From Antechinus flavipes (taxonomy: Eukaryota), in the NCBI RefSeq assembly GCF_016432865.1, contig NC_067399.1:20274001-20338000 (forward strand): 64,000 nt of DNA, given 5' to 3'. This document shows, piece after piece, positions 6,290 to 50,822 of this stretch; the stretch's first letter is position 1, and the number at the start of each line of letters is the position of its first letter. A model generated the notes under the pieces. That model was not told the origin of the DNA, searched no databases, and was given only the letters and a program-made list of their open reading frames with translations. The position numbers were made by a program, and so were the translations under genes.

Positions 6290-6365
<76 letters not shown>

Positions 6366-8997: not shown

Positions 8998-9084
8998 GAG
9001 ACGGTCCTCACTCACGGCCATCCCTTCCTCCCCTTTCCATTCCCTCCTCTTTTATTCCTGCCCCAGACTCCCACCTCTGCCCCC

Positions 9085-9138
9085 TATAAAGGCTCATGTA
9101 GGCCCCTGCGGGACATATTGATCCAGACCAGCCAGAGG
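9085..9138 (+). promoter_or_regulatory. REG-A TATA box (9085-9090) and non-coding exon 1 (ends 9138)
   Basis: CCTATAAAGG, then donor G|GTAAGT at 9139; same layout as the five paralogues. Confidence 0.85.
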
Positions 9139-9501
9139 GTAAGTGGGGAACCTACAGGGGAGGACCATTGGAGGAGCAGGGACCTGCCACCCCTTCTTAG
9201 GCAAGGAGCCCCTCCTACTAAGGTCCCCGCAGCTCGGGAGCTTCTCCGAGGGCTCCGGGACCCTCCGTTCTCCGGAAACCACAAAACGTCCAGATTTCCT
9301 CATATTCAGGGAGGAGGAGGCAGAACTTGGGGAGTTAGAGGGGTGGGAGGGCAGGATGGACCCACTGCCGAGAACAGGGAGGAGGGAGGAGAATCCCACC
9401 GAACTCTCTTTTTTCCCTGTTTTTCCCTGGCTCCATCTCAGCCTGGGATCAGAAGCCGATGCTGTCCAGGGTTTCAGGGTCTTCCCCCTCCCACAGATGT
9501 A

Positions 9502-11576
9502 ATGTTGCCCTCCAGCCTCTCCAAGTGGCTCTTCTACTGCCTGCTGCTCCCAGATCTGGTCCTGGGTGAGTCACCCCTGTCCAGGGTGCATGTCCCCGGC
9601 ATCCCGCTGTGTGACCTTAGATAAAGCCCCTCTCTCTCTGATCCTACTCCCCAGAGAGGGGAGAAGTCCGACCGCATGGGTGGGATTCCTTCTGATCCCA
9701 CCTGCCTCCCATAGCAAGACCCCGGGTTTCTCACTTTGCTTCTTTTATCCGACTTGCCCTCAGGCCAGATTACCAAATGGATCACTCCTCCCCAGATCTC
9801 CTGCCCAGAAGGATCCAAGATCTATGGCTCCCACTGCTACGCAGTATTCCAGGAACCCCAAACCTGGACCGCTGCAGAGGTGCTTGGTTATAGGCCACCC
9901 GGTATGGGTTTGCAGGGGAGGCGTGTTTGCCATTTGATTTCAGGGCTCCTTGGGTCGATGCCACGGGATGGGAACGGGACTGCACCTTCATTGCCCCCTA
10001 AGCTGACCCAGACGTCACTCGTGCTTTCCCCCTCCCACCTGGATCCTCAATCCTCCCCCAGCAGCAACCCCCCCCCCCCGTGGCTCTCCCTGGGTCAGTT
10101 TCCCTGTCTGTAAGGAGAGACCCTCCCCAAGTGCCTCAGTCCTTGCCTTTTCTGATAGCGCTCCCTTCCTCCCCTGCCCTCTCACTGCAGACCCTCCCTG
10201 GGCAGCATAGCCTTTACCCCCTACAATGTCCCTTCTCCTCTTTTCCTCAGCTGAAGTGTCAAATGCTGACCTCCGGCCATCTCCTGTCCTTGATGAATGA
10301 GTCCGAAGCCTCCTTTGCGGCCGCTCTGGCCACCCAGAGTCTCGGACACAACCGGAGTTACCTCTGGATCGGCCTTCACGACCCCTCCCAGGTTTTTCCA
10401 CTCCCCCACCCCCCACCCCCCAGTCCATCTCCTCTGTCTGAATTCTGGGGCTGAGGGGGTGGAAGGGGAAATAGGGGGAGGAGAGAGCTATGGAGAAGAG
10501 AAGTCCACTCTTGCCTCCCCATCCCCACGATCAGTTTTCTTACCTATCCTCAGTCTTCCCCTTGCAGCCATCCATGCAGAGACCCATTCTTAAACACAAA
10601 TCATTTCTCTGAGAGGAGAGGGGAATGGAAATGCATGGGCCGCCTCCAGCCCCCTTCACTCAACTAGAGGCTGGGAAGGGTCAGAGTATAAGGAAGAACT
10701 CAGAGGTCCTGGGTTCCAATCCCAGCTTTGCCCGTGTGATTTGGGGCAAGTTCCAAAAGTGTGTAAAGGGAGGGGGTAGCTTAGGTGACCTTTCAACTTG
10801 GAATCAATGATAATAATGATAGCTAGCATTGACAACCACTTTAAGGTTTGCACAGTGCTTTCTGTACTGTGCTCAATAAGCTCCTTACAACAGCCTTTGG
10901 AGGGAGGGGCCACCATGATCGCTGTTTTAGAGATGGGGAAACTGAGGCAGACAGAAGCCGAATGTTTGTGCAAAGCAACATAGCTGGGACGATTGAAGCA
11001 GGAATCAGATCCGGTTCTTTCGGGCCCAGCATTCTCCCCACTATGTTTATGGTGATACTCTTTGTTGGGTGATTTCTAGGGGGGATTTTTACACAGACGC
11101 GGGTGGAACTCAATGTCTTCTGAGGTTCCTTCCAATACTGAGCAGCCTCTGGCCTTCCCCAGAACCGCCGCTGGCACTGGAGCGACAATGCCATGCTTAC
11201 CTTAAATACCTGGGAGAAAGGAGCCCCCGCGAAAACCACCCTCAGGTTCTGCGTGAGTCTGTCCCCACGCTCAGGTGAGAGAGGAAAACCCTTCTCTTCA
11301 GTCCTATCTCCATCCCTGCCCGAGTCAAGCGGGACCTCGGGGAGCCGGGGCTGCCCTCTTCCTCTTGCTCTTTTCTTCTTTTATTCCCCTCTCTCCTCAA
11401 TTCTTTCTTTTCCAGGCCATAAATCCCTATCTCACCTATGGGGTTGGGCAGCTCCTGCCTGAGCTCAGAGCCTACAGTGGAGACTTTTCCTTTTCTTTTT
11501 GTCTTCAGAGTACCTACTGTGGAAGGATCAACACTGCAACGAGGAGCTTCCCTTTATCTGCAAGTTCTCAGTCTAG
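9502..11576 (+). CDS. REG-A: REG-family (REG1/lithostathine-like, REG3-related) secreted C-type lectin, 166 aa
   Basis: Exons 9502-9565, 9764-9879, 10251-10391, 11163-11274, 11509-11576 (64+116+141+112+68 = 501 nt), all GT-AG and open. Protein: MLPSSLSKWLFYCLLLPDLVLG-QITKWITPPQISCPEGSKIYGSHCY...WIGLHDPSQNRRWHWSD...FCVSL...WKDQHCNEELPFICKFSV. Signal peptide plus six CTLD Cys. AATAAA at 12042. Confidence 0.93.
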
Positions 11577-11689
11577 AGGACTTAAGAGCACCTGGAGGCT
11601 GAAGAGAGCAGGGAACTGAGTATGAAATCACCATGGAGCTAGGAATGGACTCAGGAGACCAGGAGTCCAGCCTCCCAAAGAAACTTCTC

Positions 11690-11995
11690 CTCCTCTTCCT
11701 TGCCTTCCTTTCCTCTTTGTCTCTTCCTTCCCCTTATTCTCTCTTCTTCGCTCTTTCTTTTTCTTCTCTCACCTCCTCCTTCCATTTCTTCTTCTCTCTT
11801 CTTGCCTACCCTTTCCTTTCTCTCATTCCTTCCTCTTCCTTCCCTTTCCTACTCCTCTTCCTTCCCTCCTCTTCCCCTCTTTTCTTCTTCTCCTCTTCCT
11901 TCTCCTCCCCTCTTTTTCTTTTCCTTCCTTTCCTCCTCTTCCTTTTTATGTTCCCCAATTTCTCCCCTCCCTTCTTTCCTCATCCAAATTTCTAT
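11690..11995. repeat. CT-rich low-complexity tract in the REG-A 3' UTR
   Basis: Pyrimidine-only stretch between the stop (11576) and AATAAA (12042). Confidence 0.85.
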
Positions 11996-12089
11996 ATGGA
12001 TTTTATGGCCCTAACCCTAACCCTAACTCTAAAAACATCAAAATAAAATTTTGTCTTCTTCAACTGTCTCCTGTGTTTATTTTGTTTGA

Positions 12090-15258: not shown

Positions 15259-15308
15259 TATAAAGGGTCCTGTCCCCGCTGGGTCGGACACACAGTGGGG
15301 CCAGTCTG
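15259..15308 (+). promoter_or_regulatory. REG-B TATA box (15259-15264) and non-coding exon 1; GAS TTCCAGGAA at 14879-14887
   Basis: TTATAAAGG, then donor G|GTGAGT at 15309. Confidence 0.85.
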
Positions 15309-15644
15309 GTGAGTGAGAGAGAAGGGCCCGGGCAGGGCTTGGTCACTTCACACATGAGGTTATTCCCTTTTCAGAGGCAGGAAGGAGGCGTCTCACTTTG
15401 GGAAGGGAGCAGGGTTAGAGGGAAATGAAAGCAAAGATTCTTCCTGAGCCTCTATGAGAGGGAAGGGTCTGTTTCCTCAGGCCCAGCTTTGGTCCAGCCC
15501 CAGAATCCCAGGAAAGGGGAGGTGGAAGGGGCCCCCAGCCTCAGCTCAGGGAAGCCAGAAGGATCTGAGCCCCGACCCCAGCTGCCCTCAGGGCTGGGGG
15601 GGCAGGGGGCTCAGGTCTCTCTCTGTGTCCTCAGACTCCAAAGG

Positions 15645-18600
15645 ATGCTGCCCCTCACTTTCTCCGAGCTGCTCTTCGCCTGCCTGATCCTCCCAGGTCT
15701 GGCACAAGGTGAGAGCTTCCCCTGGACCTGGACCAGCCCTCGGGAGGAAAGGAGGGGGCCGGAGCAAAGGGATGTGGGAAGGACGAAGCCATGCCGGCAG
15801 CAGGGATCTCTGGGACTTCAGGCAGAAGCTGAGGCTCCCACTTGTCTTCCTTCCCCCAGGCCTGGAGGACCCCTCGGATGCTCCCTCAGCCAGGAGCTCC
15901 TGCCCCGAAGGCTTCCTTTGGTTTGATTCCAACTGCTATGGTTTAGTACGCTACGAAGAGACTTGGAGCTTCGCGGAAGTTGGTTGGGGAAAGGGATCCT
16001 TGAGGGAGGGGAGAGGGGGACCCCCGGTGGGTGAGCTCTAGGACCTGGAGGAAGTCCCGCCCTCCTCACCTAGCTCCGCCCTTCTGCCAAGGAGCACGCC
16101 CGACCCTCACCCTCTTTTAGACTCATTGGCTGCCCTGCCCTTGCTAGTGCTCCCCATCCCCGTTCTCCTCCCCCCTGACGCTCGCCCCCCTGCTTTCCCC
16201 CACAGCTGCTGTGCCAGAACTACCCCTCAGGCCACCTTGTGTCCCTGCACAGCGAGGCTGAGAAACGCTTCGTGGCCACCGTGATTACTGAGAATGGGGG
16301 CAGCCAGAAGCCCATTTGGATCGGTCTCTATGACCCCCAGGAGGTGAGACCCCAAAGCGCCCCCCTCTCTCTGCCCAAGACGAAGGGGGGAGCGGGGGCT
16401 TGTGCCAGTCATCCTGGCTCGGGATCTTTCTCGCCTCTCCAGAATAAGGGTCCGGAGCCGTGGAAAAGGGAAAGAAAGGGAAAAGAAACCTGGAGACAGC
16501 TGCAAAGTGGACATTTAGAAATGGGGGTGGGGCAAACCCAAGTGACTTGCCCAGGGTCCCACAGCCAGGAAGTATCTGAGACCAGATTTGAACCCGGCTC
16601 CTCCTGACTTCAGGGCTGGTTCTCTATCCACTGTCCCACCCAGCTGCCCCTTCCCATTGCTTTTGGTTCAACTAGCACGCACAGTGTGCTCAGCCTGAGC
16701 TTCCCTAGAAACTGTGATAAGAGCCGAGCTTACAAAAAAGTAAAAACAATCTGTCCCCCCAGAACCCCGCCCCCAACCTCACATTCTAACGGATGGGGCA
16801 ACAAATAACTGAGTCCATGCAAGAGCTATCGGGGCAGATAGCTCTGTCTCTGTGTGTGTCTCTCTCTTTCTCTGTGTGTCTCTGTTTCTCTTTCTCCCTT
16901 TCTCTGTCTCTCTGTGTGTCTTGGTGTTTTTCTGTCTCTGTCTCTCTCTCTCTGTGTCTCTGTCTCTCTGTGTCTATCTCTGTCTCTTTCTCTGTCTCCC
17001 TGTCTGTCTCTGTCTCTCTGTGTGTCTCTCTGTCTCTTTCTGTGTCTTCGTCTGTCTTAATCTATCTCTGTCCCTCTCCCCCTGTCTATCCTTTTCTCTC
17101 TATCTCCCTCACAAATTAGAGAGGAGAGAATATATGGAAGGAGACACTTGCTGTCGGTCCTTCATTCTTGGAGGACCCCTGACATCAGGAAGAGGATGTG
17201 TTGACTTGCAGGTGACGAGGACCTACGTGAGACAGGGCCATGCAAAGTCACCAACCTCACTTTCTCCTCTAGTCATCTGGGTCCAGTAGCAAGACATAGG
17301 TCAGGATGACCGGAGATGGCGCTGGAGAGAGGGAGAAAATGGACTGAGAAAAAGCCAATAACCCGGGGAATTCAGGCTCACTGATGACTTAGGGGCTGTT
17401 TTCTGTGGGCTGGGAGACAAGGATCAGGCCAGCCTAAAGCTGGTTAAGGAGAAAGTGAGAGTGGAGAAAGTAGACTGTGGTCACAAAGAGGAAAGCTTGG
17501 ATTTAGGGATCGGTTTGTGACTTGGGGGTCCCTAAGGTTATGGGACTGGCTGGGCCAGGACGAGGAGGGTCAGAGATAGAGGAGTCTGAGACCCAGAAAT
17601 TATAGAAGGGTCCCTGGTCAGGGCAGGGCTCTGAGTGGATGAAGGGGGATGGCTCAAGAATTGCAGCTGGACTAGCAACAGCAGCATCTGGAAAGGCTTA
17701 GAGGGCAGAGCCATCCCAACATGTTCTGGGGGAACCCAGGGAAGGTTCATAAACATCTGGTCTACAAGAATGGGAGGGGAGGGGATCGGGGTGTCTCACT
17801 CTTTACTAACCACTGCATTATCTGACCCCTCCCCCAGAACCGCAGGTGGCGCTGGTCCAGCGGTGGCCTTTTTGTCTTTCAATCCTGGGATAAGGGAGCC
17901 CCCAGTCAAACCAACCCAAACTATTGCGTAATCCTGACCCAGGATTCAGGTGAGAAAGAGAGAAACACCAATAATTCTGGCAATAGCCAGGCACATCTGT
18001 GTTTGCTAAAGCCCTGGATTCACAGGGGTCCCTAGAACATGAGCTCTGCTGTGTCCCTCCTCTCCCTCTTTTCTCCTTTCCTCTCCTCTTTCTTTTCTTT
18101 TCCCTTCCCTTCCTTTTCCTTCCCTTCCCTTTCCTTCCTTTCCCTTTCTATTTCCTTCCCTTTCCACTTCCATCCCTTTCCTTTCCTTCCCTTCCCTTTT
18201 TTCCCCTCCCCTCCCTTCTTTTCCTTTTGTTCTCTTTCTCCTCTCCTCACTTCTCCCTTTACCTCTCATTTCTTTATTTCTCTCCTTTTTTAGCCACAAT
18301 GTCATAGCTGTGTTGCCCACAATCTGAGCTCATTCTTCCAATCCCCACTGACACTGGCAGGTTAGGTTCCAGAGGAAGACTACTCCCTCTCTCCTCAGGA
18401 TTCTCAAAGTAAACTTAGATCTACACCCGACAGGGTTTCCAGAAGCCATTTACTTCCATGCTTTTATTGGATTATTGGATAGGCAAGGAGACTGAAACTC
18501 TGAGAACTTGCAAAAGTTTACATGTGTCTATCTGAGGGACTGATTTTATAATTAGCCTTTACTGGTATACTTTCCCCAGTAATTATCAGTTCACATTAAT

Positions 18601-19176
18601 TAAACATTCAGACTTGGAATCATACTCTAGAATTAAAAAAATTCCATTGGGATAGAAAGAATAGCTCTCACAACCCCTCCTCCACAGAAAAAATCCCAAG
18701 GGTACGTACTTTCTCCCCCAAACACATGCAGAGACAAGAAAAAAGAGGTCTCAAACTGGGAAATCCCATGGAGCGACATCCTTAGTATCCAATGCTATTC
18801 CAAGCAGCAAGATGGGCAGTGGATAGGGTTTCTCCCAATGCACCTTCTGTTCAGCGTCATTCCATTTCTTTCCATGGATTTTACATCACTCAAATGATCA
18901 AGGACTTTTCAGTTTCAGTCTAATGCACTAGACTGAGCCATTGATTCAATTAAAATAATTGCTTTAAGCTGCCTAGACTGTTTCATTTGATACAATGACT
19001 CCCACTCTCAAACACAAATGAATGGAAGGAAAAGGCCAAGGTCATCAGAACAGGGACCTTCAGACCCAGTCTAGCCAGACAAACATAACCTATACTCTTT
19101 CTCTCTAGGATTCCAAGCATGGAAGGATGAGCTGTGTAAAGTAAAGCTCCCCTACGTCTGCAAGTTCAAGGCCTAG
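15645..19176 (+). CDS. REG-B: REG-family secreted C-type lectin, 166 aa
   Basis: Exons 15645-15708, 15860-15978, 16206-16343, 17838-17949, 19109-19176 (64+119+138+112+68), GT-AG and open. Protein: MLPLTFSELLFACLILPGLAQG-LEDPSDAPSAR-SSCPEGFLWFDSNCY...WIGLYDPQENRRWRWSS...NYCVIL...WKDELCKVKLPYVCKFKA. AATAAA at 19418. Confidence 0.95.
16845..17085. repeat. (CT)/(CTGT) low-complexity repeat in REG-B intron 4
   Basis: Degenerate TCTCTGTC repeats. Confidence 0.9.
18050..18290. repeat. (CCTT/CTTT) low-complexity repeat in REG-B intron 5
   Basis: Pyrimidine-only tract. Confidence 0.9.
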
Positions 19177-22100
19177 AAGTGGTGAATCAGAAGAATGAAT
19201 TAAGGTTCTTCAACCCCTGATTCAAATGGACTTTCAGAGGGTCCTGGGTGTATTTTCTCTGCCCTATCAGAGAACCTTCATTCCACCCACCTCCCCACAC
19301 ATGAACCGTTCTCCCCTTGTCATGGCCCTCCTGTACCCCTTTCTCCCTCCCCTCCCCTTTTCCTTCCATCATTACCCTTATGCTCATTACCTTTGATTCA
19401 GAGCACTGACCATGAAGAATAAACTGTCCTTCTCCCTACCTTGATGCCTCATGTTCTCTGTATGATTCTTCAAATATAGATTATTGTGTGTATTTACACG
19501 GATACATATTTTGTGGGGTACTGACCAACTTCTCTCCGCTCTAGCCTATTCAGCGAGGCTATTGATTTATTCGTGAAGACTTTATCGAATAAATAGTAAG
19601 TGACCTACTTGTTGCTGAGACTCCTGCAGATTGTGGGAAAGGCAAACTATGTCCCCCATTCTTTGGGGGTTCAGTTTTAACTGAAAGTAAAGACACAATA
19701 TGTGACATAGATGATAGAATTCCAGACCCACAGAATTTCAGAATTGAAAAGAACTGGACCCCAATCTCGTTTAAGCCGCGTTCCCAAACTAGTACAAATT
19801 GCGGTCTAATTCCCCCTTTTCAGAGAGGACAAGTCCCTGAAACAGGGCAGGTGGGAGTCAGATCTTCTAATGAAGAACGAGAACATTTCCATCGGTGCCT
19901 GAGTGAGAGGACAGGGAGAACCTCCGATCAGATTTCAGAGTCTGGAGATGCATCGGGGAACATCTGGTTGGCTAGGACTCTGAGGCGGGTGGGCTCTTGT
20001 CCCTGGAACCATCTCTCTGTCCAGTTTAAGAGGAGAAGAACAGACAGTTCTTGCCCCCTTTCCTGCCCAGAAGACAGTGCAGCAGTGCAGATCTGTGTTC
20101 CGGGTGAGGAAGCTGTTCCCCTCCAGGAGCTGTCCATGGTAGCCTTGAACAGAAGCTGGTAGAAATCACATGGCCTCAAACACAACTTTCTTACCCACTT
20201 GGGCTGAGATGAGAGTTACTCAGAGTGCACTTTATCAGCCCCAAAGATTGTATTATCCAAAGTTTTTTAAGTCCTTGTTTTTTGTCAGACTTATTGGGGA
20301 TACAAATAAAAGGGAAAAGAAAGGTATAGTTGATAGTCAAGGAACTTACATGCTAATGGAGAGAAGAAACATGCAAAGGGGAGATGAATGGAGAGAGAAG
20401 GTATCTGGGAAGGGGACATGGGGGTGAGGTCTGGAGAGGCAGAAGCACCGAGGAGAATGCTTCTATTCACTCAGGTGAATGGAGGTGAATGAAAAATTGT
20501 CCATTTGGGACTTTCTCCAAAATGGAGACCAACAGAAGGCACTTTTCACTGGGGGAAAGGGACTGACATGGCAGAAGGATGTTCCTGCGTGAGAGAGGAT
20601 AGGCAATCAGGACATGCATTTGGGGGACAAAGAGTCTTCCTACTGTGAAAAGTTTAGTAAGGGATAGTGTAGATCACCTAGAAGGGTTTTAGGTTTGCAC
20701 AATTTTCTCTATGAAGGTCTTCAAGCCCAGCTTTATATCTGATCCAATGTTAAGCTCTCCAGTAGCCCTGACCGATGTATATTCAGCATGTTCTTGAATA
20801 CTTTCCTATGATAGGGAGCTCACTGCTCTTTTGGAAGGTCATTTTCATTCTGGATGGATCACCATTATAGCAAATGGTCTCCTTGGTGGACAAAAGCATA
20901 ATCGTCCCTGTTGTTTCCAGTCATAAGCCTGCTCCAGACAAAGAGATGGAAGCCGATCTCTCTTTAGCTGACAGGATTGATGATGTTAGAATGCTGCCAG
21001 TTGTGGCAGGCAGGGCTTTCTACAGCCGAAGGGCTGATAGGAGGCAGTAAGACAGACAATGAGGGAGTGTGCCTCCGGGAGCCCATGATCCTTTGGGTGG
21101 CTGGATCCACAAAAGATCTTTGAGTAGCAGGGAGAAATTCCAGTCTGGGATTCTGAATATGCAGATGTCTTTGGGGGTGTGTGGAGATAAACAGCTTGGC
21201 CCCAAGGGCCAGCTCCTGTCTCCTATGCCACAGGGCCACACGTCTCTGTAAGGTCCATGAGCACCTCTCACTGCATATCCTGAATCCCTTGTTCCGGCAG
21301 GGGGACTGTTCCATGTGGACATCATCACGTGTGCTGGGATGGGTTCATTCTCCAGCCACCTGCTGGGCTTCACCTGGACTCAGCTAAAAGGCTTCTCTTC
21401 TTGATTCAGACACGGTTTTCTTTTATTTGAGCCCAGAAACCAAACTTCAGCTCCCTCAGAGACAAAGAAAGGCCTCACACCCCCAGCTGGATGGTGGCTT
21501 CCTCTCCGCACAGAGAGGTGACAGCCATGGACCTACGTGTCAGTCTATACCCAAATTTGCATCTTCCATACAAATATCCCAAACTGGGAAAAAATAGGAA
21601 AAGAAAATGGGCATTTTTGAAAGTGCCTACAATGTACCAGCACTCTGCCAAGTGATTTACAAATTACCAACTTATTTGATCCTCATTTTATAGATAAGGA
21701 AACTGAGGCACAGTAATTTGCTTAGGGTCATAATCATAAGTGTCTGAGGCAGGACTTGAACTCAGGCCTTCCTAACTCAGTCCTAGCATTCTATTCCCTG
21801 TACCTAGATTGTGAGGTCCCAGAGGAAAAGTGCCATTGATCTCTGTGCTGCTTCCACCGCACCTGGTGTCTGGTAGAGGGGCACTGATAACATACATCCC
21901 ACCTGGATGAAGGCCCAGTAGTATAATTATATTATATTATGATAGTGTATCTAATCCGACAACCAGGAACCCATTAGCTAGAATTCCCTCCTAATTTAGT
22001 TCTTTTCGGATCCTTGCCTTCTTCACCCAAGTCCTGCTGGGAATTCAGTCTGTGCATATTCCTTACTTTTCGACTCTCCAACCTATCACAGAATGTATTA

Positions 22101-22328: not shown

Positions 22329-22384
22329 TATAAAGTCCCTGCCACAGCCTGGCCAGAAACACCTTCCCCAACCTCCCCGGCCTG
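22329..22384 (+). promoter_or_regulatory. REG-C TATA box (22329-22334) and non-coding exon 1; GAS TTCCAGGAA at 22168-22176
   Basis: CCTATAAAG, then donor G|GTAAGT at 22385. Confidence 0.85.
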
Positions 22385-22725
22385 GTAAGTGAGAAGCGAA
22401 GGGCCTGGGGAAGTTGGGTCCCTCCAGACCGATGAGAGCCATCCGATTGCTGGGAGAAGGAGCCCTTTAATCTCAGGGAAGGAGCTACATTCTGGAGAGG
22501 TGTCAGTTGGTTCTCAAGCTGGAGCCACTCTGAAGAGCGGGGTTCCCTTCTCCCATCAGGTTCCTCCCAGCCCCAGTTGCCCTATTCCTCAAGAGCCCAG
22601 AAGGGAAGAGGTGGGAGGACAGAGTAGGGCTAAGAGGAACAGGTCCGAGCCCCCATCTCTGACCTCGTTGCAGAGCCAAGAGCCCCCGTACCTCACGAGC
22701 TGCGCTTGCACCCCTGTCTCCCACG

Positions 22726-24471: not shown

Positions 24472-24742
24472 AGGAGATAAGTGTGAACAAAGAGTGAGGA
24501 TTCTGCAGTCTGGAGCCAAACGTGTACCCTGGGGACCCTGACTGAAGTCTGCCTTCCCAGAAATCCTTCTTCCTCTCCCCTACATCCCTTCTCTCTTTTG
24601 AAATGTCCTTCATGTCTTCATTTCTCTTCCTCCTCTCACTTACATTCCTCCTGGGGCTGTCTGGCCTGGGGTCCTGGCAAGAATAAACCATCCTCTCTAT
24701 TATCCCACTGTCTCTAGTATTTGTTTGGTTTCAAATCTGGAG

Positions 24743-24930
24743 NNNNNNNNNNNNNNNNNNNNNNNNNNNNNNNNNNNNNNNNNNNNNNNNNNNNNNNNNN
24801 NNNNNNNNNNNNNNNNNNNNNNNNNNNNNNNNNNNNNNNNNNNNNNNNNNNNNNNNNNNNNNNNNNNNNNNNNNNNNNNNNNNNNNNNNNNNNNNNNNNN
24901 NNNNNNNNNNNNNNNNNNNNNNNNNNNNNN
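24743..24930. other. Assembly gap (188 N)
   Basis: Run of N. Confidence 1.
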
Positions 24931-39900: not shown

Positions 39901-41030
39901 TGGATTTGTTAATTAGTTGAGGGTTTGTGGGAGAAGATCAGAAAGAAGCATGTGTCCTCTCCACCCTCAATTTCTTTTGATCTTGGGAGATTCACCACTT
40001 GGTTCTGCTTATCTTCTTCTTTGGGGGCGGTTTTCTGCTAGAAGAAGCTACAGAGAACGCTGTTCTTTATTGATTGTGTCAATGGAACCCAAATCCACTC
40101 TAGAGAATGAGATGCCCTTCCCAAGAGTCTGAAATCTTTCTTTTCTGGGGAATTTCAGTAATTAATAGGAAGTTAGAAGATCCAGTCAAGTCCCCTCTGG
40201 TCCACTGACTGGAATTCCCTCCTTCTCCAAGGCCAAAGTCTCTCACGCTACACCTTTCCCAGAACTTGGTCTTTTCCATCCAAACCCTGCAGAAGGCTCA
40301 CTCAATCCCATGGTTCTTTCCTCTTCCTTCAATGATCAAACATCAATGTTTCCTGTGGCTATGGGAACATGGCAGCTGGTATGCTTTGGGGCAGGAGCCA
40401 GTCATATGTCTCTATCTCATATTATGGGAGGAAAGCAGTGGTCTGATCTTCTCCTGAACCCAGGTGAGGAAGACCTCATCTCTTCCAGGAATCCCCCTGC
40501 CCCTCACCAGCACCTGTGCTCTGATCCTCCCTCCATCCACCTGTCCCTGCCAAGTCCCCTCCTTTTAAATGCCTCCCAAAATCTACACCCACTTGGGTCC
40601 TCTCTCTAAAAAAGTTTTGTCCTCTTCTGGTCAGAGCTATTATCCCTTCAATCTACCAATCTGATAAATAAAGGAGATAAGGTCTGGGAGATCAGGCCCC
40701 TGCAGGTTCCTGAGACGATTTCCTTCCCATTTTGGAGGGAGATGGCATTAGATGGTCATTTCTAATACATTATGATGGAAAGAACGCTGTTCACTGGACC
40801 ATCCAGTGAACCATCCAAAATGCACCCAGATTTACATATTCCCTGAGACCCCCAGGAAGAGGAGAAGAGAAAGGAGAAAAGAGGGAAATCAGTCCCAGCC
40901 TGGGCGCAGAGACTAGGAGACTAGTAGCAGCCTGGGGCTCCCAAAGTCTTGGCCATTATCCTTGTCCCCATTTCCCCATGGTCCTTGGGGTGGGAGATCA
41001 GGGTTTCTCTCACCTCCTCCCCAGAATCAG

Positions 41031-41743
41031 ATAACGCTCTCTGCCATGATGTCCCCCAGCTTCTCAGGGCTGCTCCTCGCCTCCTGCTGCTCCCCTGCCT
41101 GACACAAGGTGGGTCCCTCAGGCCTCCCTCTGACTACCCACCTGGGCCTAGAACAGGGGCTTGGACATAGTAAGAGGGAAAGGGAAGGGGCTCTACAACA
41201 GCAGGGGGCACCGTGGGACAGAGAAGAAGGGGTTGGGGGTCTGTAGGGTTCAAAGCCTGATGTCCAGAGAGCAGGAACCTCAGCTGTGCCCCCCTGCAGC
41301 TGCTCTCCTCTCTCCCCAGGCCAGCAGGAGGCCCCTGCACCCTCCTCTGCCAGGGGCTCCTGCCCCCAGGGCTTTGGCTTCCATGGCTCCCACTGCTATG
41401 GAGTATTGGGTCCTGAGGAGATCTGGAACACTGCCGAGGTGGGTGCTGGACAGGGCCCCTGGGAGGGGGCGGGGTCTGTCTCCCTATCCCAAGGTTCCTT
41501 GGGGTCATCAGTGTGGCCTTCATGAGTCCCTAAGCGCTCACCTGTCACTCAGACCTTCCCTTCTCAAGTTTTGCCAGAGCTTTGCTCTCCTTTTGGTGTT
41601 TTGTGGATCTCCCATTTCCCAAAAAAGTAACCCCTGTGCCCCATAGCCATCTCACACGGTCCCTTTAGTCTCTTCTCTTCCTCTCTCTGCAGGATTCCAG
41701 AGGTGGAAAGATGAACCTGTTCCTCTGCAAGTTCAAAGCTTAA
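41031..41743 (+). pseudogene. REG-E pseudogene
   Basis: First ATG mutated to ATA (41031). A 1-nt deletion in exon 2 gives TGA at 41100. Exon 3 is intact (41320-41438). Exons 4-5 are deleted. Exon 6 (41693-41743) lacks 17 nt. The TATA box and exon-1 donor are degraded (about 40600-40680). Confidence 0.93.
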
Positions 41744-43794
41744 AGAGGACAAGACAGAAGGAAGAATTGGAATTCTCTTGTCTTAGAGCCAGACTCAGTC
41801 ATGGACCGCCATGGCCATAATATCTCTGCCCTCCTAGAACATCTTCCCTTCTGACTTCCTCACACCAACCATCTACACCCTCTTTAATATCCACTATCGC
41901 TCTTTAAGCATCTCACTCAGTGCCTTGGAACCTTTTATGTTATAGACTACAATAAGCCCTAAGTTGACAGGCGACCTGAACATAAATGGTCACAATATTT
42001 TTAAAAAGTAGAAGAGATCAAGTTTAACTCTTTTGACAAACATTAGTAGGGTGAAAATTCTTCAGCAGCGAGTCAAGGAGGTCATTGAAGAAAAAAACAA
42101 ATATGATTATTTTAAATTGAAAATAAGCTAACTCTCAAAGTATGAAATTCTACTTTTGCCTCTATATTGGGAAGATAGAAGACAAGAATTCTTCACATGG
42201 ACTCCTTGGGACTATGACTGAAGGAGAATTCTACTTCAGGTTCTTTCAATATGTTGTCGTCTTTACAGATAGCTCTGTTATAGACTCCACATATAATTTT
42301 GTGTCTTTGAATAAAGTTCTTTTTGATCTGAAGCTTTGAATTTTTTGAAGAGTCACACGTTTTTAAGCACAATGATGCTTCATGGTTTATAAATTACTTC
42401 TCTCATAACAACATTGTTTGAAAGAACTTCAATTTTAGAGATGCTGAGAGTCAAGGATACTTTCAACATCACAGATCTTTGGATTTCACATTCTCATTTC
42501 ATTTCAGCTTAGAATATCCCACAGTCTAGTGAGGTCAAATATTATTTCCAAAGTACACTTTTTTGGCTTCTCTTTTTATTTGCTCTTGCTGATTGTAAGA
42601 TATCCTTCATGTTCAGCCTGCCATTGCCATCAAATTTTGGGTTCCTGCCCCAATGTCTGGTACTTTGAAAGCCTCTGGCCTATTTGGCCCCCAGGAGTCA
42701 TGAGTTTTACTTCATGGCATCTTTTTTTGGCCTTGTATGTTTTTCTATCCTGGGATATTCTAACATCATCATCCTTGAAAGTTTCATGATCTTCTTACAT
42801 CTCTGTGCATATTAGATTGAATGAAGCATATGGAAAAACTAATTGTGGAGGCAGGACCTCCCCTCAGAAGTGTAGTGATTAAGTTACACATTGAGTTTGT
42901 CTTCCTGATATTCTAAGATTCCCCCTGGATTTAGGTTTCCAATGATTCTCATGTCTTTGAGACATGTATGACTCTCCCGGTGCCCTATTTCATGCTGGTT
43001 TCTTCCGTGGACCTTTTTTCTGCCTCTTCTCATATTCAAAAATCTTTTCCAAGTTGTAATCATCCCTGAACATAGCAGGTTCTTTATTAGCCTTTTGGTA
43101 GATTTACTGACTCTTGCCAGTGGGTAAGAATCATCACAGGAGAAAAATCCAGAGTTGTTGAGACCAACATACATCTTCAGAGAATTCATTCAGTCAATCA
43201 AGAAAAGAAGTGAATTTATTCAACATTTCTTCTGACCCAGATTGTAATAATTCTCTTTAGAATGTAATGTTCTCTGTTGGGATTTTCTTGGGGTCTCTGG
43301 GAGCAGCCTTCGTTTCAGTTCAGTAATCATCACACGAGTAGCCAGGGGTTAAAGTCCAAATCCTTTATTGTTTCCTTCAAAGTCTTGTTTCCTTCACTTG
43401 GGGCTCGGCTAGTTTTCTGGATCTTGGTTTCAGTGGAGAAGCGAAGGAGGAGAACCTACCACCACTTCTCTGTCTTCCCTAGTTCTGATTCTGGCTGAGT
43501 TTGTCCAAGCTTAGATGCTCTCTTATCAAAGGTGTGAGCATCATACTAAGTAATCATTGTCTCTATCAATTCTATTGACTTAGCACCTTGTTTCAAGTTC
43601 TGACCCATAACACCACATAATATTAGGGGTTTAAAGAAAGGCAAAATCTAGGTCCTTACCTGCAAAGGGCTTGCATTCTGAAGGGAAAGACAGCATACAT
43701 AGATCATCATACTCAAGTGGCGGAAGTTGCTTTCAGAGGTGTTTTACTCAGTCTAACAGGAATCATAAGTATGAGATCTCTCCATGATGTTAAG

Positions 43795-45908: not shown

Positions 45909-46344
45909 TTCCAGGAATTAATGGAAAGACAGAGGGTTTTATCAGGAAAACGTGGCTCCCCTGACTGGAATCCCCTCCTTCTCCAAGGCCAGGTCTCTGA
46001 CCCTACACCTTTCCCAGCAGGAAGTTCCCCCATTCCTGTGAGTTCCCTCTTCCCCCCATCGCCAACCTTCCCAGAAAGTTCCCCTGGCTGTGGGAACGGG
46101 GCAGCTGGCGAGCTTTGGGCAGGAGCCAGTCATGGGTCTCTACCTCACCCTGGGGGAAGAACCCAGGGCTCCTCTCTGCTCCTGACCCCAAAGTGAGGAA
46201 GACCTCGCCTCTTCCAGGAAGCCCCTGCCCCTCCCCAGCCCCTGTGCTCGGGCCCTCCCTCCTCCCGGCCCTGCCCCCATAATGGGCCCTGTCCCTATAA
46301 AGGTTCCATCCTCTTCTGCTCAGACACAGGATTCCTTCCGGCCG
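45909..46344 (+). promoter_or_regulatory. REG-F promoter: GAS sites 45909-17, 46068-76, 46212-20; TATA 46296-46301; exon 1 ends 46344
   Basis: Near-identical to the REG-D promoter; donor G|GTAAGT at 46345. Confidence 0.85.
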
Positions 46345-46721
46345 GTAAGTGAGGGGGAGCAGGTCTGGGACATGGGCCCCTGCAGGCTCTGGAGGCCGTT
46401 CCCTTCCCAGGGGGGAGAGGAGGCAGCCGCTCCGGGAGGCCGTTACCTCGGGGGAAAGGCCAGGAGAGGGTCACTCTTCTCAGAGTCCACCCTGTCCAGG
46501 GCTCCCAGATTCTGTCCTGCTCCTGCGGTCTGCACATTCCTAAGGCTCAGAAAGGGGAGGAGGAGGAGAGAGGAGGGAACTCAGTCCCAGCCCGGGCCCA
46601 GAGACCGGGGGAACAGCAGCAGCCCGGGGCTCCCGAGGTCTCGGCCATTATCCTTGTCCCCTTCTCCCCATGGTCCTTGGGCGGGAGATCAGGGTTTCTC
46701 TTGTCTCCTCCCCAGAATCAG

Positions 46722-48773
46722 ATGACGCTCTCTGCCATGATGTCCCCCAGCTTCTCGGGGCTGCTCCTCGCCTGCCTGCTGCTCCCCTGCCTGACACAAG
46801 GTGGGTCCCTCAGGCCTCCCTCTGACTGCCCACCTGGGCCTAGAACAGGGGCTTGGACATAGTAAGAGGGAAAGGGAAGGGGCTGGACAGCAGCAGGGGG
46901 GGCACCGTGGGACAGAGAAGAAGGGGTTGGGGGTCTGTAGGGTTCAAAGCCTGATGTCCAGGGAGCAGGATCTCAGCTGTGCTCCCCTGCAGCTGCTCTC
47001 CTCCCTCCCCAGGCCATCAGGAGGCCCCTGAACCCCCCTCTGCCAGGAGCTCCTGCCCCCAGGGCTTTGGCCTCCATGGCTCCCACTGCTATGGAATATT
47101 GGGTTCTGAGGAGACCTGGAACACTGCCGAGGTGGGTGCTGGACAGGGCCCCTGGGAGGGGGCGGGGTCTGTCTCCCTATCCCAGGTTCCTTGGGGTCAT
47201 CAGTGTGGCCTCCATGAGTCCCTAACCCCCACCTGTGACCCAGACCTTCCCTTCTCAGGTGACTCCAGGGCTTTGCTCCCCTTTTTGGTGTTTCTTACCC
47301 CCACTTCCCACAAAAGTAACCCCTGTCCCCCACAGCCATCTCCCCATGGTCCCTTTAGTTTCTTCTCTTCCTCTATTGACCACCCTGTCTCCCGAGGCTC
47401 CCAGGAGCCTTCTCCTGCCTCCTTCGCCCCCGGCCCCACACATTTACCCAGCCCCGCTCCCTCCCTCCACAGCTGCTGTGCCAGGGCTACCCCTCGGGCC
47501 ACCTGGGCTCCCTGCTCAACGAGGCCGAGGCCACCTTCGTGGCCACCATGATCATGGAGAACAGGGTTAAGGACCCCGTCTGGATCGGTCTGCACGACCC
47601 CAACAAGGTATGTCCGAGGGCCCGTCCCCGTCCGAGTCCTGGAGAGAAGGGGAACAACTATGTGTGTGGCGCTGATGGGGAGGAGGATCCTCAGAGGTCC
47701 GAGACCCTAAAGGAGCAGAAGCATCAGGAAGAACAGGAGAACTCCAGGGGGCAGGAGGTGGGGGGCAGGGAGAAGGGTCTGCAAGGTCTCCAGGGCTGGA
47801 GGGGGATTGCATCTCTCCCAGGGCTCCTGGGGACTCACCAACCCGCAGGTTCTCCTCGTGTCTCTGCCCGTTCTTTGCAATGAGCGACTCTTGTGTGACC
47901 TGTTACTTCTCATCCCCCAGAGGGCCCTTCTCAGGCCCCCCACTAATGGAGACCTGGGTCCCCGTGCATTTGAGGAACAGTCCAAGAGAGTCTCGGCCTC
48001 CCCAAGAGGCTCAGGGAGCTCAGGGCAGGGCCTGGGCCAGAGCTGGGCAGGAGAGTGACCGGCAGCAGCCAGGGGAGCTTTCTGGCAGAGGGAGGGAGGG
48101 GGGCTCTGCCTAAGAGAACGTGATGGGGCGGAACAGGCTGGTGCTGCCCAGTGGCAGAAGCAGCAGCCGGGGCCACAGCACCTGGGAACGACTCGGGGAA
48201 CAGAACGAGCCCGGGTTGGGAGGTCTGGGCTAACTAAGGGGCAGCTGGTCTGTTTCTTATAAGGAGTTATATACAAGAGGTAGGTGGGGGGGGTCTTGCT
48301 CTTCCCTGACCGCCCCTTCCCGATCCTCCCCCGCAGAACCGCAGGTGGAGATGGAGCAGCAACGCCCTTTACCTCTACAAGGCCTGGGAGAAGGGCTTCC
48401 CAGGGAATACCGATCCTAACTACTGCGTGAGCCTGACTCCTGAGTCTGGTGAGCTCGGACCCTCCCTCTGCCAGCTGCACAGGAGCATCCTCTTCTCCAT
48501 CTGTTCTTCCATCTTACCTTTCTATCACTTTACCTCCTTCCCCTCCTTCCTTGTTCTCTCCTTCCCTCCTTCCTTGTTCTCTCCTTCCCTCCTTTTCCTG
48601 TCATCATTCTCTGTTCTTCTTGGGACTAAAGGACAATCCTGAATGAGGAGACCCTGTGGCCAGGAAGCCATGATCCTCAACTAAACCGAGACCATCTCTC
48701 CGCAGGATTCCAGAGGTGGAAAGATGAACCTTGTCAGAACGAGAACCTCTTCCTCTGCAAGTTCAAAGCTTAA
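46722..48773 (+). CDS. REG-F: REG-family secreted C-type lectin, 170 aa (165 aa from the second ATG at 46737)
   Basis: Exons 46722-46800, 47013-47131, 47473-47607, 48337-48448, 48706-48773, GT-AG and open. Protein: ...HQEAPEPPSAR-SSCPQGFGLHGSHCY...WIGLHDPNKNRRWRWSS...NYCVSL...WKDEPCQNENLFLCKFKA. AATAAA at 49305. Confidence 0.95.
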
Positions 48774-50822
48774 AGGGGACAAGACAGGAGGAAAAGTTGG
48801 AATTCTGCTGTCTTGGAGCCAGGCTCAGCCAAGGACGGCCACGGCCATCCTCTCTCTGCCCTCCCAGAACTTCTTCCCATCTGACTTCTTCACCCAGCCA
48901 TTCACACCCACTTTGTTAGCCATCCACTCTCTCCAAGCACCTCCCTGGATGCTAACCTGCTCGGGGGCCTTTTATTTTATTGAGCACAATTATTCCAAAT
49001 CATAGGTAACATGAACATAAAGGGTAGATTAGTTTTAAAATATAAAAGGGATCAAGTTTAAGCATTTTGACTAGTCTTGTTGAGAATTTTTAAGCAGGAA
49101 GTCAAGGAGATGATTGAAAAAAAAAAACTGATTACTTGAAATTGAAAAACAAACCTGAACCTTATTTATGAAATCCTACTTTTACCTCTATTTTGGCAAG
49201 ATGGAGGAAGGCCATTCTCTATGTGTATATTCCTAGGAACTCCTTCAGGTGTTGTCTTTATGGTTAGCTTTGTTGTAATCTCCATCAATGTTTATTTGTC
49301 TTTTAATAAACTTTTTTTCTGACCTGATTCTCTGAATTATTGTGGTGAGCTATTGGTTTTTAAGCATGATGACGCTTCATGGTTTATAAAGAGCTTCCCT
49401 CATACCCCCCCTGTGGAAACAACCCCAATTTTAAAGATGACAAAAGTTGGGGTCAGAGACCCTCTCAATAGCACAGATCTTTCACATGGAAAATGAGAAT
49501 CCTTCTTGGCAGTGAAGTGCAGGAGAGAGACTGGGCCCATAGCCCCATTTAGTTCAGATTAGATCGTCTCAAGATCTGGTGAGATCCATCATTATTTCTA
49601 AAATAAACTTTTTTGATCTTCTAACTCCTGTTAATCCCGAGATCTCCTTCACGGTTTGTCGCCATTGCCAACAAATGTTGAGTTCCTGTCCCCGTGTCTG
49701 ATGCTTTGAATTTGGAAGCTCCTGGCCTATTTGGCCCCCGAGGAGTCATGAGTTTCATGAACTTCATGACATCTTTTTTCTTTGCTTTGTGAGCTTTTTC
49801 CGTCCTGCGGTATCCGAGGATCATCACAGTTGGAAGGTTCATGGTCGTCTTACAGTTCTCTGCATGTCAGAGTGCAGGAAGCACATGGAAAAGCTGATTG
49901 TGGAGGCAGAAGTACCATGAACATCAGCCAAGTTCCCCGTTGAGTTTGTCCCCCTGATATACTCAGGTCTTTCAGTGACTCCCGTGCCCTTGAAGTATGT
50001 TTCACTCCCTGGTGGCCTGTTTCATGCCGGGGAGCTTATTTCTCCCTCTCCTTGTAGCAAAAGCCCTGTCCATGATTGTTTCTAGCCCTAAAAATATGAG
50101 GTTCTCCTTTATTCTTCCAGTAGAGATATATTACCTCTGGATAAGAATCAACAGAGCAGCAACATGCAGAGTTGTTGAGAACAACAGTCATTTTCAGAGA
50201 ATTAGTTTAATCACTCATCAGCTAACCAATCAGACAAAAGCATTTATTCAGCATTTCCTGGGTCCCAGACAATGCTAGGGATGCACAGAAAGGCCAAAAG
50301 GAAGGGCTCACATTCTACTGGGGGAGACAGTATATGTAGATGAAAGATCCTTCAGAGACATTTTATTCAGCTAGTCCCACAGGAGATCCAGGTATGGGAC
50401 CTCTCCCCATCTCCCAGACCTTATTCCTTGGGTAGCCAAAGGGCAAGCAGCACCTGAGACAGGAGCAGGAGTAGATATTCCCGCAAAAGACCCTCAAAAT
50501 GATGGGACAGAGCTGATTTTTTCCTCTCCAATGACTAATTCCCAAAATGCCCCCGGAAACATCATCTTCCCCGTTTCATCTCGAAATTCATGTCCCCTCA
50601 ATATACTGGGCACAGCAGGGGGACCTTCCCCTTTATCTCAGGTAGGAGTTTAACCGAACCTAGCATTTATATAGAGAGATGTCAAGTTTGGGAAACACTT
50701 TACAACCATTTCCAATTCTCGGAGAGAGGTGATATTATTGTCTTACTTTTCCTAAGGATGAGAAAAGTTAAATGACATACCCAGCAAATTCAGGTCTGAA
50801 GCAGAACTGGAACTCAAACGTT

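What the first reader, a model, noticed from the sequence alone, without database searches (positions are those of the whole stretch)
9085..49310. Expanded, actively turning-over marsupial REG lectin cluster (5 intact genes, 1 pseudogene, 1 truncated copy)
Seen: five complete spliced ORFs with conserved intron phases (1,0,0,1). A, B and C are deeply diverged from one another. D, E, F and G are a young sub-family with alignable flanks. Knowledge: eutherian REG1/REG3 proteins are secreted gut/pancreas lectins with antibacterial and regenerative roles; REG-B exon sizes 64/119/138/112/68 match those I recall for human REG1A. Inference: an independent birth-and-death expansion of innate-immune lectins. 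It could matter for pouch young, who depend on innate defence; milk, pouch skin or gut expression is plausible but not shown.
Basis: partly seen in the sequence, partly recalled or inferred. Interest (0 to 1): 0.75.

Follow-up and report, generated by a model that had tools for sequence, protein, structure and literature searches.

The report
Antechinus REG (lithostathine-like) lectin gene cluster
This is a real tandem cluster of five intact REG/lithostathine-type secreted lectin genes plus one dead copy in the yellow-footed antechinus; the genes are already in NCBI's annotation, three are old and conserved among dasyurid marsupials, and only the last sub-family is duplicating, exchanging sequence and decaying.

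Summary
The window is Antechinus flavipes chromosome CM028218.1, 20,274,001-20,338,000. It holds five intact + strand REG genes: A 9502-11576, B 15645-19176, C 22726-24471, D 31174-33435 and G 46722-48773. All have GT-AG introns in phases 1,0,0,1. Each is 100% identical to an existing NCBI "lithostathine-like" protein.

I found one degraded copy (about 41019-41755), not a pseudogene plus a separate truncated copy. That makes six copies in the stated range, not seven. The gap at 24743-24930 lies 272 nt past C's stop and just past its AATAAA, so it touches no reading frame.

All marsupial REGs form one clade (100/98) apart from eutherian REG1 and REG3, so there is no one-to-one orthology. Whether that clade is sister to REG1, to REG3 or to both is unresolved.

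A, B and C keep the same order in Sminthopsis. Turnover is confined to the D/G-type array:
- Antechinus has three intact copies (one lies beyond the window), one pseudogene and perhaps one more hidden in the gap at 58418-58917.
- Sminthopsis has at least 12 copies.
- D and G share a recent 1.7 kb conversion tract.

The proteins are REG1-like (144-aa mature chain, Arg11, no REG3 EPN loop), so an antibacterial or pouch role is unsupported. Expression could not be tested. The scan had not found this cluster on other DNA.

The parts
9085..12047 (+). REG-A gene. TATAAA at 9085. Coding exons 9502-9565, 9764-9879, 10251-10391, 11163-11274 and 11509-11576 (166 aa). First AATAAA at 12042.
   Evidence: Spliced model. 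It is 100% identical over 166 aa to P0073, 'lithostathine-2-like isoform X2 [Antechinus flavipes]'. NCBI also calls a 206-aa product with the same start and stop. Exon 4 hits Pfam Lectin_C at E 4e-4. A lacks the Arg11 tryptic site.
15259..19423 (+). REG-B gene. TATAAA at 15259. Coding exons 15645-15708, 15860-15978, 16206-16343, 17838-17949 and 19109-19176 (166 aa). AATAAA at 19418.
   Evidence: Model. It is 100% identical to P0290, XP_051838855.1 'lithostathine-like'. Exon 4 aligns end to end with human lithostathine residues 40-84. Orthologues are 83-88% identical in Sminthopsis and Sarcophilus.
22329..24687 (+). REG-C gene. TATAAA at 22329. Coding exons 22726-22786, 22945-23063, 23316-23453, 23850-23961 and 24404-24471 (165 aa). 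AATAAA at 24682-24687.
   Evidence: Model. It is 100% identical to P0023 residues 48-212. NCBI's 212-aa model adds an exon at 21159-21248. A C-type orthologue lies after B in Sminthopsis, 82-87% identical in exons 4-6. C sits on a long branch and has unusual residues (RDY and NGRW where the family has HDP and NRRW).
24743..24930 (.). Assembly gap (188 N) just downstream of REG-C's polyadenylation signal. It is intergenic.
   Evidence: It lies 272 nt after C's stop. No exon of any model lies within 5 kb downstream.
30742..34008 (+). REG-D gene. TATAAA at 30742. Coding exons 31174 (inner ATG 31189)-31252, 31461-31579, 31919-32053, 32828-32939 and 33368-33435 (170 or 165 aa). AATAAA at 34003.
   Evidence: Model. 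It is 100% identical to P0288, XP_051838857.1. D has the longest end branch of the three Antechinus D/G-type genes (0.16 against 0.05-0.06). dN/dS against G is 0.93.
30375..32068 (+). Tract in which D and G (45928-47622) are 96-99% identical apart from a dip at about 30882-31150. It covers the promoter, introns 1-2 and exons 2-4.
   Evidence: Sliding identity. Introns 1-2 differ by 2%, intron 3 by 12%, intron 4 by 16% and the downstream flank by 24%. This fits a recent gene conversion or unequal exchange.
40033..43200 (+). Degraded D/G-type copy (a pseudogene; I call it psi-F). Its lesions:
- the TATA box reads TAAAAA (about 40606);
- the upstream ATG is ATA (41031-41033);
- exon 2 (41046-41108) has a 1-nt deletion;
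- exon 3 (41320-41438) is intact in length;
- a deletion of about 1.3 kb removes exons 4 and 5, with the junction at about 41684;
- the exon 6 remnant (41693-41743) has a 17-nt deletion.
   Evidence: Three-way alignment with D and G, tblastn and blastn. NCBI calls no gene here.
46296..49310 (+). TATAAA at 46296. Coding exons 46722 (inner ATG 46737)-46800, 47013-47131, 47473-47607, 48337-48448 and 48706-48773 (170 or 165 aa). AATAAA at 49305.
   Evidence: Model. It is 100% identical to P0001, XP_051838856.1 'lithostathine-1-alpha-like [Antechinus flavipes]'. The AlphaFold2 model's best PDB matches are human lithostathine 1LIT and 1QDD.
54215..60197 (+). Second copy of G's flanks around the assembly gap at 58418-58917. 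It lies outside the finding's coordinates.
- 54215-54459 and 57304-58003 match G's upstream 45169-46096 at 96-98%.
- 58918-60197 matches G's downstream 49368-50652 at 94%.
- The gene body would fall inside the gap.
   Evidence: Self-blastn. 58004-58417 matches nothing in G. This may be a hidden further copy, a partial duplicate or an assembly artefact.

Best explanation
The stretch is the proximal part of the REG gene cluster of Antechinus flavipes. REG here means the lithostathine / regenerating islet-derived type of C-type-lectin-like protein.

Gene and protein make-up:
- There are five head-to-tail genes. Each has a TATA box 390-450 nt before the ATG and five coding exons in phases 1,0,0,1.
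- Each encodes a small secreted protein: a 21-22 aa signal peptide and a 143-144 aa mature chain with the six cysteines of the REG fold.
- B, C, D and G keep an arginine at mature position 11, the trypsin site of human REG1A. A does not.
- All have the short REG1-type NRRW loop. None has the longer REG3 loop with its EPN peptidoglycan-binding motif.

Most likely way of working (inferred, not shown): like REG1/lithostathine, they are secreted into pancreatic juice or the gut lumen, clipped by trypsin after Arg11, and act as an insoluble, protease-resistant lectin-like core.

Evolution (shown):
- All sampled marsupial REGs are one clade apart from eutherian REG1 and REG3.
- Within that clade, A, B and C are old genes with conserved order in dasyurids.
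- The D/G-type gene is a tandem array that changes copy number between genera, exchanges sequence between copies (the D-G tract) and sheds pseudogenes (psi-F).
For: Gene models and database identity:
- Models and splice sites.
- Identity to NCBI proteins and gene calls at the same coordinates.

Family membership:
- Pfam Lectin_C on exon 4 of each gene, and precomputed PF00059 on the full proteins.
- The best single-domain PDB matches are human lithostathine and REG3A. G scores 162 bits against REG1A, 112 against REG3A and 98 against REG4.
- The AlphaFold2 model of G matches 1LIT and 1QDD best (TM 0.74-0.75 by target).
- Signal peptide, six Cys, Arg11, the NRRW loop and no EPN in 0 of 47 marsupial sequences against 8 of 18 REG3 sequences. 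These are read against the family description in PMC6817481.

Evolution:
- Trees: marsupial clade 100/98; clade A 100/100; clade B 100/99; D+G 99/88. Antechinus D, G and the downstream gene form a clade at 98/98, and the Sminthopsis copies at 88/90.
- Same A-B-C order in Sminthopsis. At least 12 distinct 171-aa D/G-type proteins in Sminthopsis; the two loci I looked up hold five separate 171-aa gene calls about 8.7 kb apart.
- Pseudogene lesions.
- Mosaic D-G identity.
Against: - The only hint is that NCBI's pipeline calls these models.
- The function is by analogy with REG1A only. The residue after Arg11 is Ser, not Ile as in eutherians.
- A is as close to REG3A as to REG1A (138 against 135 bits).
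- C and D depart from otherwise conserved residues, so they may be changing function or decaying.
- The AlphaFold2 model is only moderately confident (mean pLDDT 72), and the loop at 116-132 is below 50.
- Clustering by taxon can be produced by gene conversion as well as by independent duplication.
Confidence: 0.85

Rival explanations
1. This is an expansion of innate-immune, antibacterial REG3-like lectins, born independently in marsupials, which protects pouch young through milk, pouch skin or gut.
For: - The marsupial clade is independent of eutherian REG1 and REG3.
- The D/G-type array is fast-changing, with dN/dS up to 0.93. All 12 exon-6 differences between D and G change the amino acid.
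- With a distant outgroup the marsupial clade groups with REG3 (99/88).
Against: - No marsupial REG has the REG3 loop insertion or the EPN motif that REG3A needs to bind peptidoglycan and kill bacteria (PMC6817481).
- Mature pI is 5.4-7.2, so the proteins are not cationic.
- The REG3 grouping is not robust. Holding eutherian REG1 and REG3 together costs 0.66 lnL units, AU p 0.455.
- The exon-6 pattern has a chance probability of about 0.12 (my calculation).
- There are no expression data and no searchable paper on marsupial REG.
Confidence: 0.2
2. Concerted evolution rather than recent birth. The D/G-type copies are old duplicates whose exons, and for D and G the whole 5' half, are kept alike within a species by gene conversion. 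On this view the species-specific clades and the 'young' look are misleading.
For: - D-G substitution differences are 2% in introns 1-2, 12-16% in introns 3-4 and 24% in the downstream flank.
- dS among D, G and the downstream gene is 0.07-0.13, while their flanks differ by 22-24%.
- Identity is mosaic: at 30882-31150, D is closer to the downstream gene (91%) than to G (78-82%).
Against: - Intron divergence between the downstream gene and D or G (12-20%) is not far above dS (0.12-0.13), so much of the pattern fits plain duplication followed by divergence.
- I did not align DNA from the Sarcophilus or Sminthopsis arrays, so orthologous flanks were not tested.
- Copy number really differs between genera (3+ against at least 12), and that needs births or deaths.
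Confidence: 0.45
3. Part of the apparent array is an assembly artefact. Haplotype copies or mis-joined contigs inflate or hide copies, so the copy count in this window is not the true one.
For: - G's flanks recur at 94-98% identity on both sides of an N gap (58418-58917) with no gene between them.
- There are three gaps in 64 kb.
Against: - D, psi-F and G differ by 10-30% outside the conversion tract, far more than haplotypes would.
- Each intact gene has its own distinct protein and NCBI model.
- The related Sminthopsis assembly shows the same kind of array without N in the stretch I read.
Confidence: 0.15

Closest known systems
Human REG1A / lithostathine (pancreatic stone protein; PDB 1LIT, 1QDD)
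   Same: - Precursor of 165-166 aa, signal peptide of about 22 aa, mature chain of 143-144 aa, six cysteines, and Arg at mature position 11 in B, C, D and G.
- The short NRRW loop, an acidic pI, and five coding exons in a 2-3.5 kb gene inside a tandem cluster.
- It is the best sequence and fold match for G (162 bits; 51-52% identity).
   Different: - It is not a one-to-one orthologue. The window genes sit in a marsupial-only clade.
- The residue after Arg11 is Ser, not Ile. The Thr5 O-glycosylation site is not conserved.
- A lacks Arg11 altogether.
Eutherian REG3 (REG3A/HIP-PAP, REG3G, mouse Reg3b/g), the bactericidal gut lectins
   Same: - Same fold, same gene structure and the same kind of tandem cluster, with lineage-specific duplicates.
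- A scores as well against REG3A as against REG1A.
- One rooted tree puts the marsupial clade next to REG3.
   Different: All window proteins lack the 5-residue loop insertion and the EPN motif of REG3. They are about 9-10 residues shorter and share only 37-42% identity. The sister relation is not statistically supported.
REG4
   Same: C-type-lectin-like fold and a short loop.
   Different: It matches clearly less well (98 and 82 bits). According to PMC6817481 it has seven exons and lies on another chromosome in human and mouse.
Dasyurid REG clusters already annotated by NCBI (Sminthopsis crassicaudata, Sarcophilus harrisii)
   Same: Same A-B-C order followed by an array of D/G-type genes. Orthologues are 83-90% identical.
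   Different: Copy number of the D/G-type array differs. Sminthopsis has at least 12 distinct proteins and Sarcophilus at least 2. Antechinus has 3 intact copies and 1 pseudogene, plus a possible copy in a gap.

Membership tests
REG family (REG1/REG3 group of C-type-lectin-like proteins) | A single C-type lectin-like domain (Pfam PF00059) as the whole mature protein | tested here: met
   Exon 4 of all five genes hits Lectin_C, with E from 2.7e-5 to 0.022; on these single-exon pieces only B reaches Pfam's cut-off. PF00059 is precomputed on the identical full proteins P0001, P0023 and P0073 and on the gene calls for B and D.
REG family (REG1/REG3 group of C-type-lectin-like proteins) | Closest solved relatives are REG proteins, with the same fold | tested here: met
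   The best single-domain PDB sequence hits are lithostathine and REG3A. The Foldseek top hits of the G model are 1LIT, 1QDD, 1UV0 and 4MTH.
REG family (REG1/REG3 group of C-type-lectin-like proteins) | Secreted: N-terminal signal peptide, about 144-aa mature chain, six conserved cysteines | tested here: met
   All have a hydrophobic 21-22 aa N-terminus ending in QG or LG, a mature length of 143-144 aa and 6 Cys. The six Cys columns are invariant in 19 REGs. The signal cleavage site was judged by eye and alignment, not by a predictor.
REG family (REG1/REG3 group of C-type-lectin-like proteins) | Six-exon gene of 2-3 kb in a tandem cluster (PMC6817481) | tested here: inconclusive
   Five coding exons, genes of 2.1-3.5 kb from ATG to stop, and a head-to-tail cluster are shown. 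The non-coding exon 1 is only inferred from a TATA box 390-450 nt upstream. There was no RNA evidence.
REG family (REG1/REG3 group of C-type-lectin-like proteins) | Trypsin-sensitive Arg near the N-terminus of the mature protein (Arg11 in REG1A) | tested here: met
   Arg is at mature position 11 in B, C, D and G, in the motif (S/H)AR-SSC. A does not meet this: it has PPQ-ISC (definition from PMC6817481). Actual cleavage was not tested.
REG3 subfamily (bactericidal, peptidoglycan-binding) | Extended loop after WIGLHDP carrying the EPN motif | tested here: not met
   None of the 5 window proteins and none of the 42 other marsupial REGs has EPN. All five window proteins have the short N(R/G)RW loop, as do 18 of 19 eutherian REG1. 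In REG3, 8 of 18 have EPN and all six REG3 shown in the alignment carry the 5-residue insertion.
REG1 (lithostathine) as orthologue | Falls inside, or as exclusive sister to, the eutherian REG1 clade in a rooted tree | tested here: inconclusive
   The marsupial clade (100/98) is separate from REG1. With a distant multi-CTLD outgroup it groups with REG3 (99/88), but holding REG1 and REG3 together costs only 0.66 lnL, AU p 0.455. No REG4 or monotreme sequence was obtained.
REG4 | Best match to REG4; seven-exon gene outside the REG1/3 cluster | tested here: not met
   REG4 (2KV3) scores 98 bits for G and 82 bits for A, against 162 and 135 for REG1A. The gene has five coding exons and lies in a REG1/3-type tandem cluster.

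The most novel reading that the evidence does not exclude
The whole marsupial REG repertoire (lineages A, B, C, D/G and a further lineage absent from this window) may have radiated from a single therian REG gene, in parallel with the eutherian REG1/REG3 split. On this reading the D/G-type array is a rapidly evolving, copy-number-variable gut or secretory lectin battery in dasyurids (3 to 12 or more copies per genus). It would be shaped by gene conversion and diversifying selection on the C-terminal exons, and would be a marsupial counterpart of the REG3 antimicrobial arm built on a REG1-type scaffold without the EPN loop.
Probability: 0.25. Interest if true: 0.55.

Novelty: new member of a known kind. 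Interest (0 to 1): 0.3.

Why it matters
REG proteins are studied in human and mouse for pancreatitis, gut barrier defence and tissue repair. The human and rodent sets are themselves lineage-specific duplicates.

This work shows that marsupials built their own set on the REG1-type scaffold. One sub-family changes from 3 to at least 12 copies between related dasyurid genera. That gives a natural comparison for which REG functions are ancestral and which were invented twice.

For annotation, it shows that names such as 'lithostathine-1-alpha-like' imply an orthology that the tree does not support. It also shows that copy counts here are limited by assembly gaps.

It is not a new kind of gene. All five genes are already NCBI models. 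In eight full-text searches of the held library, five of them aimed at marsupial REG, I found no study of marsupial REG genes.

Tried and rejected

2. Outgroup for rooting. The one profile search of the representative library was swamped by giant multi-CTLD proteins. It gave no REG4, monotreme or non-mammal REG. I cut single CTLDs out of six to nine of those proteins as a distant outgroup. The root moved between runs: an unresolved trichotomy in the quick tree, and next to or inside REG1 in the careful tree. The AU test did not decide it.

3. A seventh copy inside 9085-49310. I searched with relaxed tblastn and with blastn at word size 9 on both strands and did not find one.

4. Positive selection on exon 6 of D against G. 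The count is right: 12 differences, all non-synonymous. With about 10.5 synonymous and 55.5 non-synonymous sites, the chance of 0 synonymous in 12 is about 0.12. For exons 5-6 together, pN 0.139 and pS 0.122 do not differ (Fisher p = 1).

5. A link to the gap at 24743-24930. Rejected, because the gap is intergenic.

6. Literature. I found no paper on marsupial REG or lithostathine.

7. The region 1700-9000 showed no convincing coding ORF in a mechanical ORF list.


Full report
**What the window is.** The 64 kb window has three N runs: 1159-1673, 24743-24930 and 58418-58917. Exon 4 of the last intact gene is 100% identical to the NCBI protein 'lithostathine-1-alpha-like [Antechinus flavipes]'. 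Gene look-ups place the window on CM028218.1 of assembly GCA_016432865.2, at 20,274,001-20,338,000.

**Checking the observation.**
- A motif scan found five WIGL-type exons and five C-terminal exons ending in CKF, all on the + strand.
- I built the B model by hand from the DNA and the other four by aligning B's exons.
- All five models are open, every intron is GT-AG, and the phases are 1,0,0,1.
- Each model matches a database protein 100%: A = P0073, B = P0290 (XP_051838855.1), C = P0023 residues 48-212, D = P0288 (XP_051838857.1), G = P0001 (XP_051838856.1). NCBI calls genes at exactly these coordinates.
- Each gene has a TATAAA 390-450 nt before its ATG and an AATAAA 210-570 nt after its stop. 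The finding's limits, 9085 and 49310, are A's TATA box and G's poly(A) signal.

**How the spliced models were handled.** For the word search I used a stop-free genomic stretch with the 'region' option. I then used the database proteins that turned out identical to the models. The joined models were made only inside scripts from window coordinates, for translation, alignment and trees. The step of searching with a joined model was left out.

**Copy count.** In 9085-49310 I find six copies, not seven. The sixth, which I call psi-F (about 40033-43200), is one locus colinear with D and G. Its lesions are:
- the TATA box is changed to TAAAAA;
- the upstream ATG is changed to ATA;
- exon 2 has a 1-nt deletion;
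- exon 3 is intact;
- a deletion of about 1.3 kb, between short TCTCT repeats, removes exons 4 and 5;
- exon 6 has a 17-nt deletion.

**The gap.** The gap at 24743-24930 begins 272 nt after C's stop and 56 nt after C's AATAAA. It is intergenic and no frame depends on it. I did not try to fill it.

**What the proteins are.**
- Exon 4 of every gene hits Pfam Lectin_C.
- B's exon 4 aligns end to end with residues 40-84 of human lithostathine.
- Full-length G scores 162 bits against REG1A, 112 against REG3A and 98 against REG4. A scores 135, 138 and 82.
- An AlphaFold2 model of G (mean pLDDT 72, with one loop of low confidence) matches 1LIT and 1QDD best, then REG3A.
- All five have a 21-22 aa hydrophobic leader, a 143-144 aa mature chain and six Cys.
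- B, C, D and G have Arg at mature position 11. According to PMC6817481, that is the trypsin site of the 144-aa human REG1A. A has Gln-Ile there instead.
- None of the 47 marsupial sequences has the EPN motif that REG3A needs for peptidoglycan binding and killing, and none of the marsupial sequences I aligned has the 5-residue REG3 loop insertion. All five window proteins have the REG1-type N(R/G)RW loop.
- The short loop may simply be the ancestral state, so it shows likeness to REG1, not orthology.

**Phylogeny.**
- The word searches gave 125 REG proteins from 12 marsupial genera and many eutherians.
- In an 81-row careful ML tree, all marsupial REGs form one clade (UFBoot 100 / SH-aLRT 98). 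Eutherian REG3 is a clade (100/99), and REG1 is a clade or a grade (quick trees).
- Rows left out of that tree: nine partial, erratic or redundant marsupial and REG3 rows, three erratic outgroup domains, and the human PDB chain.
- No window gene is therefore a one-to-one orthologue of REG1A, REG1B, REG3A or REG3G.
- The root is not settled. I obtained no REG4 or monotreme sequence, because the one big profile search was swamped by multi-CTLD giants. With distant CTLDs as outgroup, the marsupial clade sits next to REG3 (99/88). Holding REG1 and REG3 together costs only 0.66 log-likelihood units (AU p 0.455).
- Whether one or two REG genes existed in the therian ancestor stays open.

**Which parts are old and which turn over.** Inside the marsupial clade:
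- A has orthologues in Sarcophilus, Sminthopsis and Dromiciops.
- B has orthologues in dasyurids, bilby, koala, Dromiciops and a didelphid.
- C has a Sminthopsis orthologue.
- A-B-C lie in the same order in Sminthopsis.
- A fifth old lineage, found in nine species including didelphids, has no member in this window.

Turnover is confined to the D/G type:
- Antechinus has D, G and a third intact gene, P0289 (XP_051838858.1), which starts about 5.4 kb beyond the window's end. It also has psi-F.
- It may have one more copy. G's flanks recur at 94-98% identity on either side of the gap at 58418-58917.
- Sminthopsis has at least 12 distinct 171-aa proteins of this type. The two loci I looked up hold five separate 171-aa gene calls about 8.7 kb apart.
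- The copies group by genus: Antechinus 98/98, Sminthopsis 88/90.

**Birth or conversion.** D and G are a mosaic. From about 800 nt upstream to the end of exon 4 they differ by 1-4%, and introns 1-2 by 2%. Intron 3 differs by 12%, intron 4 by 16% and the downstream flank by 24%. One stretch of intron 1 is closer between D and the downstream gene than between D and G.
- This shows at least one recent conversion or unequal exchange. It also means the 'young' look of the sub-family partly reflects homogenisation.
- dS is 0.074 (D-G), 0.131 (D-I) and 0.121 (G-I), where I is the downstream gene. dN/dS is 0.93, 0.56 and 0.42.
- D carries most of the amino-acid change (end branch 0.16 against 0.05-0.06).
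With so few synonymous sites, the chance of that is about 0.12. This fits relaxed constraint as well as it fits positive selection.

**How it most likely works.**
- Shown: five intact, canonical REG genes encoding secreted CTLD proteins of the REG1 build.
- Inferred from the family (PMC6817481): secretion by exocrine pancreas or gut epithelium, trypsin cleavage after Arg11 in B, C, D and G, and a protease-resistant lectin-like core.
- Not supported: a REG3-type bactericidal mechanism, or expression in milk, pouch or skin.

**Novelty and verdict.**
- The genes are already NCBI models named 'lithostathine-like'.
- I found no paper on marsupial REG genes in the searchable library.
- One paper notes that REG1 is absent from birds and reptiles (PMC8144736), which fits a mammalian origin of the REG1/3 group.
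- The family is well known for lineage-specific duplicates, so a marsupial-specific set and a variable array are what a specialist would expect.
- I rate this as a new member of a known kind, of modest interest.

Noticed in passing
window 54215-60197: G's upstream and downstream flanks are repeated at 94-98% identity on the two sides of the assembly gap at 58418-58917. About 414 nt of unrelated sequence (58004-58417) lies just before the gap. A further D/G-type copy may be hidden in the gap, or this may be a partial duplicate or a mis-join.
   Followed up: partly
L004:10001-12166 (about 5.4 kb beyond the window's 3' end): A third intact D/G-type gene of Antechinus (P0289, XP_051838858.1, 169 aa). 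It is 90% identical to G and 86% to D. Its exons are 91-96% identical to D and G, while its introns differ by 12-20%.
   Followed up: partly
window 21159-21248 and 22675-22725: NCBI's model of REG-C (212 aa) starts in an extra exon 1.5 kb upstream and reads through the stretch before the ATG at 22726. That puts 47 residues in front of the signal peptide. It is probably an over-long start choice or an alternative 5' exon.
   Followed up: partly
window 9502-11576: NCBI also calls a 206-aa product for REG-A with the same start and stop as the 166-aa one. That implies an alternative or retained exon segment of about 120 nt. I did not examine it.
   Followed up: no
L006, L007, L008 (Sminthopsis crassicaudata CM109182.1, about 29.15-29.26 Mb): Sminthopsis has the same A-B-C order, then 171-aa D/G-type genes about 8.7 kb apart. 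It also has a second 209-aa gene, the same length as the C-type model, upstream of two more 171-aa genes. That suggests a higher-order duplication of part of the cluster.
   Followed up: partly
window 32828-33435 against 48337-48773: The scan's other note on this window holds as a count: all 12 exon-6 nucleotide differences between D and G change the amino acid. It is not statistically significant (chance about 0.12).
   Followed up: yes
window 5200-6120, 11630-12050, 16790-17120, 17999-18310, 33050-33250: There are long pyrimidine-rich (CT/TCC-type) low-complexity stretches in introns and between genes. They give long spurious ORFs on both strands and weak cross-matches between loci.
   Followed up: no
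window 6640-7850, 12590-13420, 43800-44630, 54820-55700: Interspersed repeat copies, 70-82% identical and in both orientations, lie between the REG genes. They are probably transposable-element fragments. I did not classify them.
   Followed up: no
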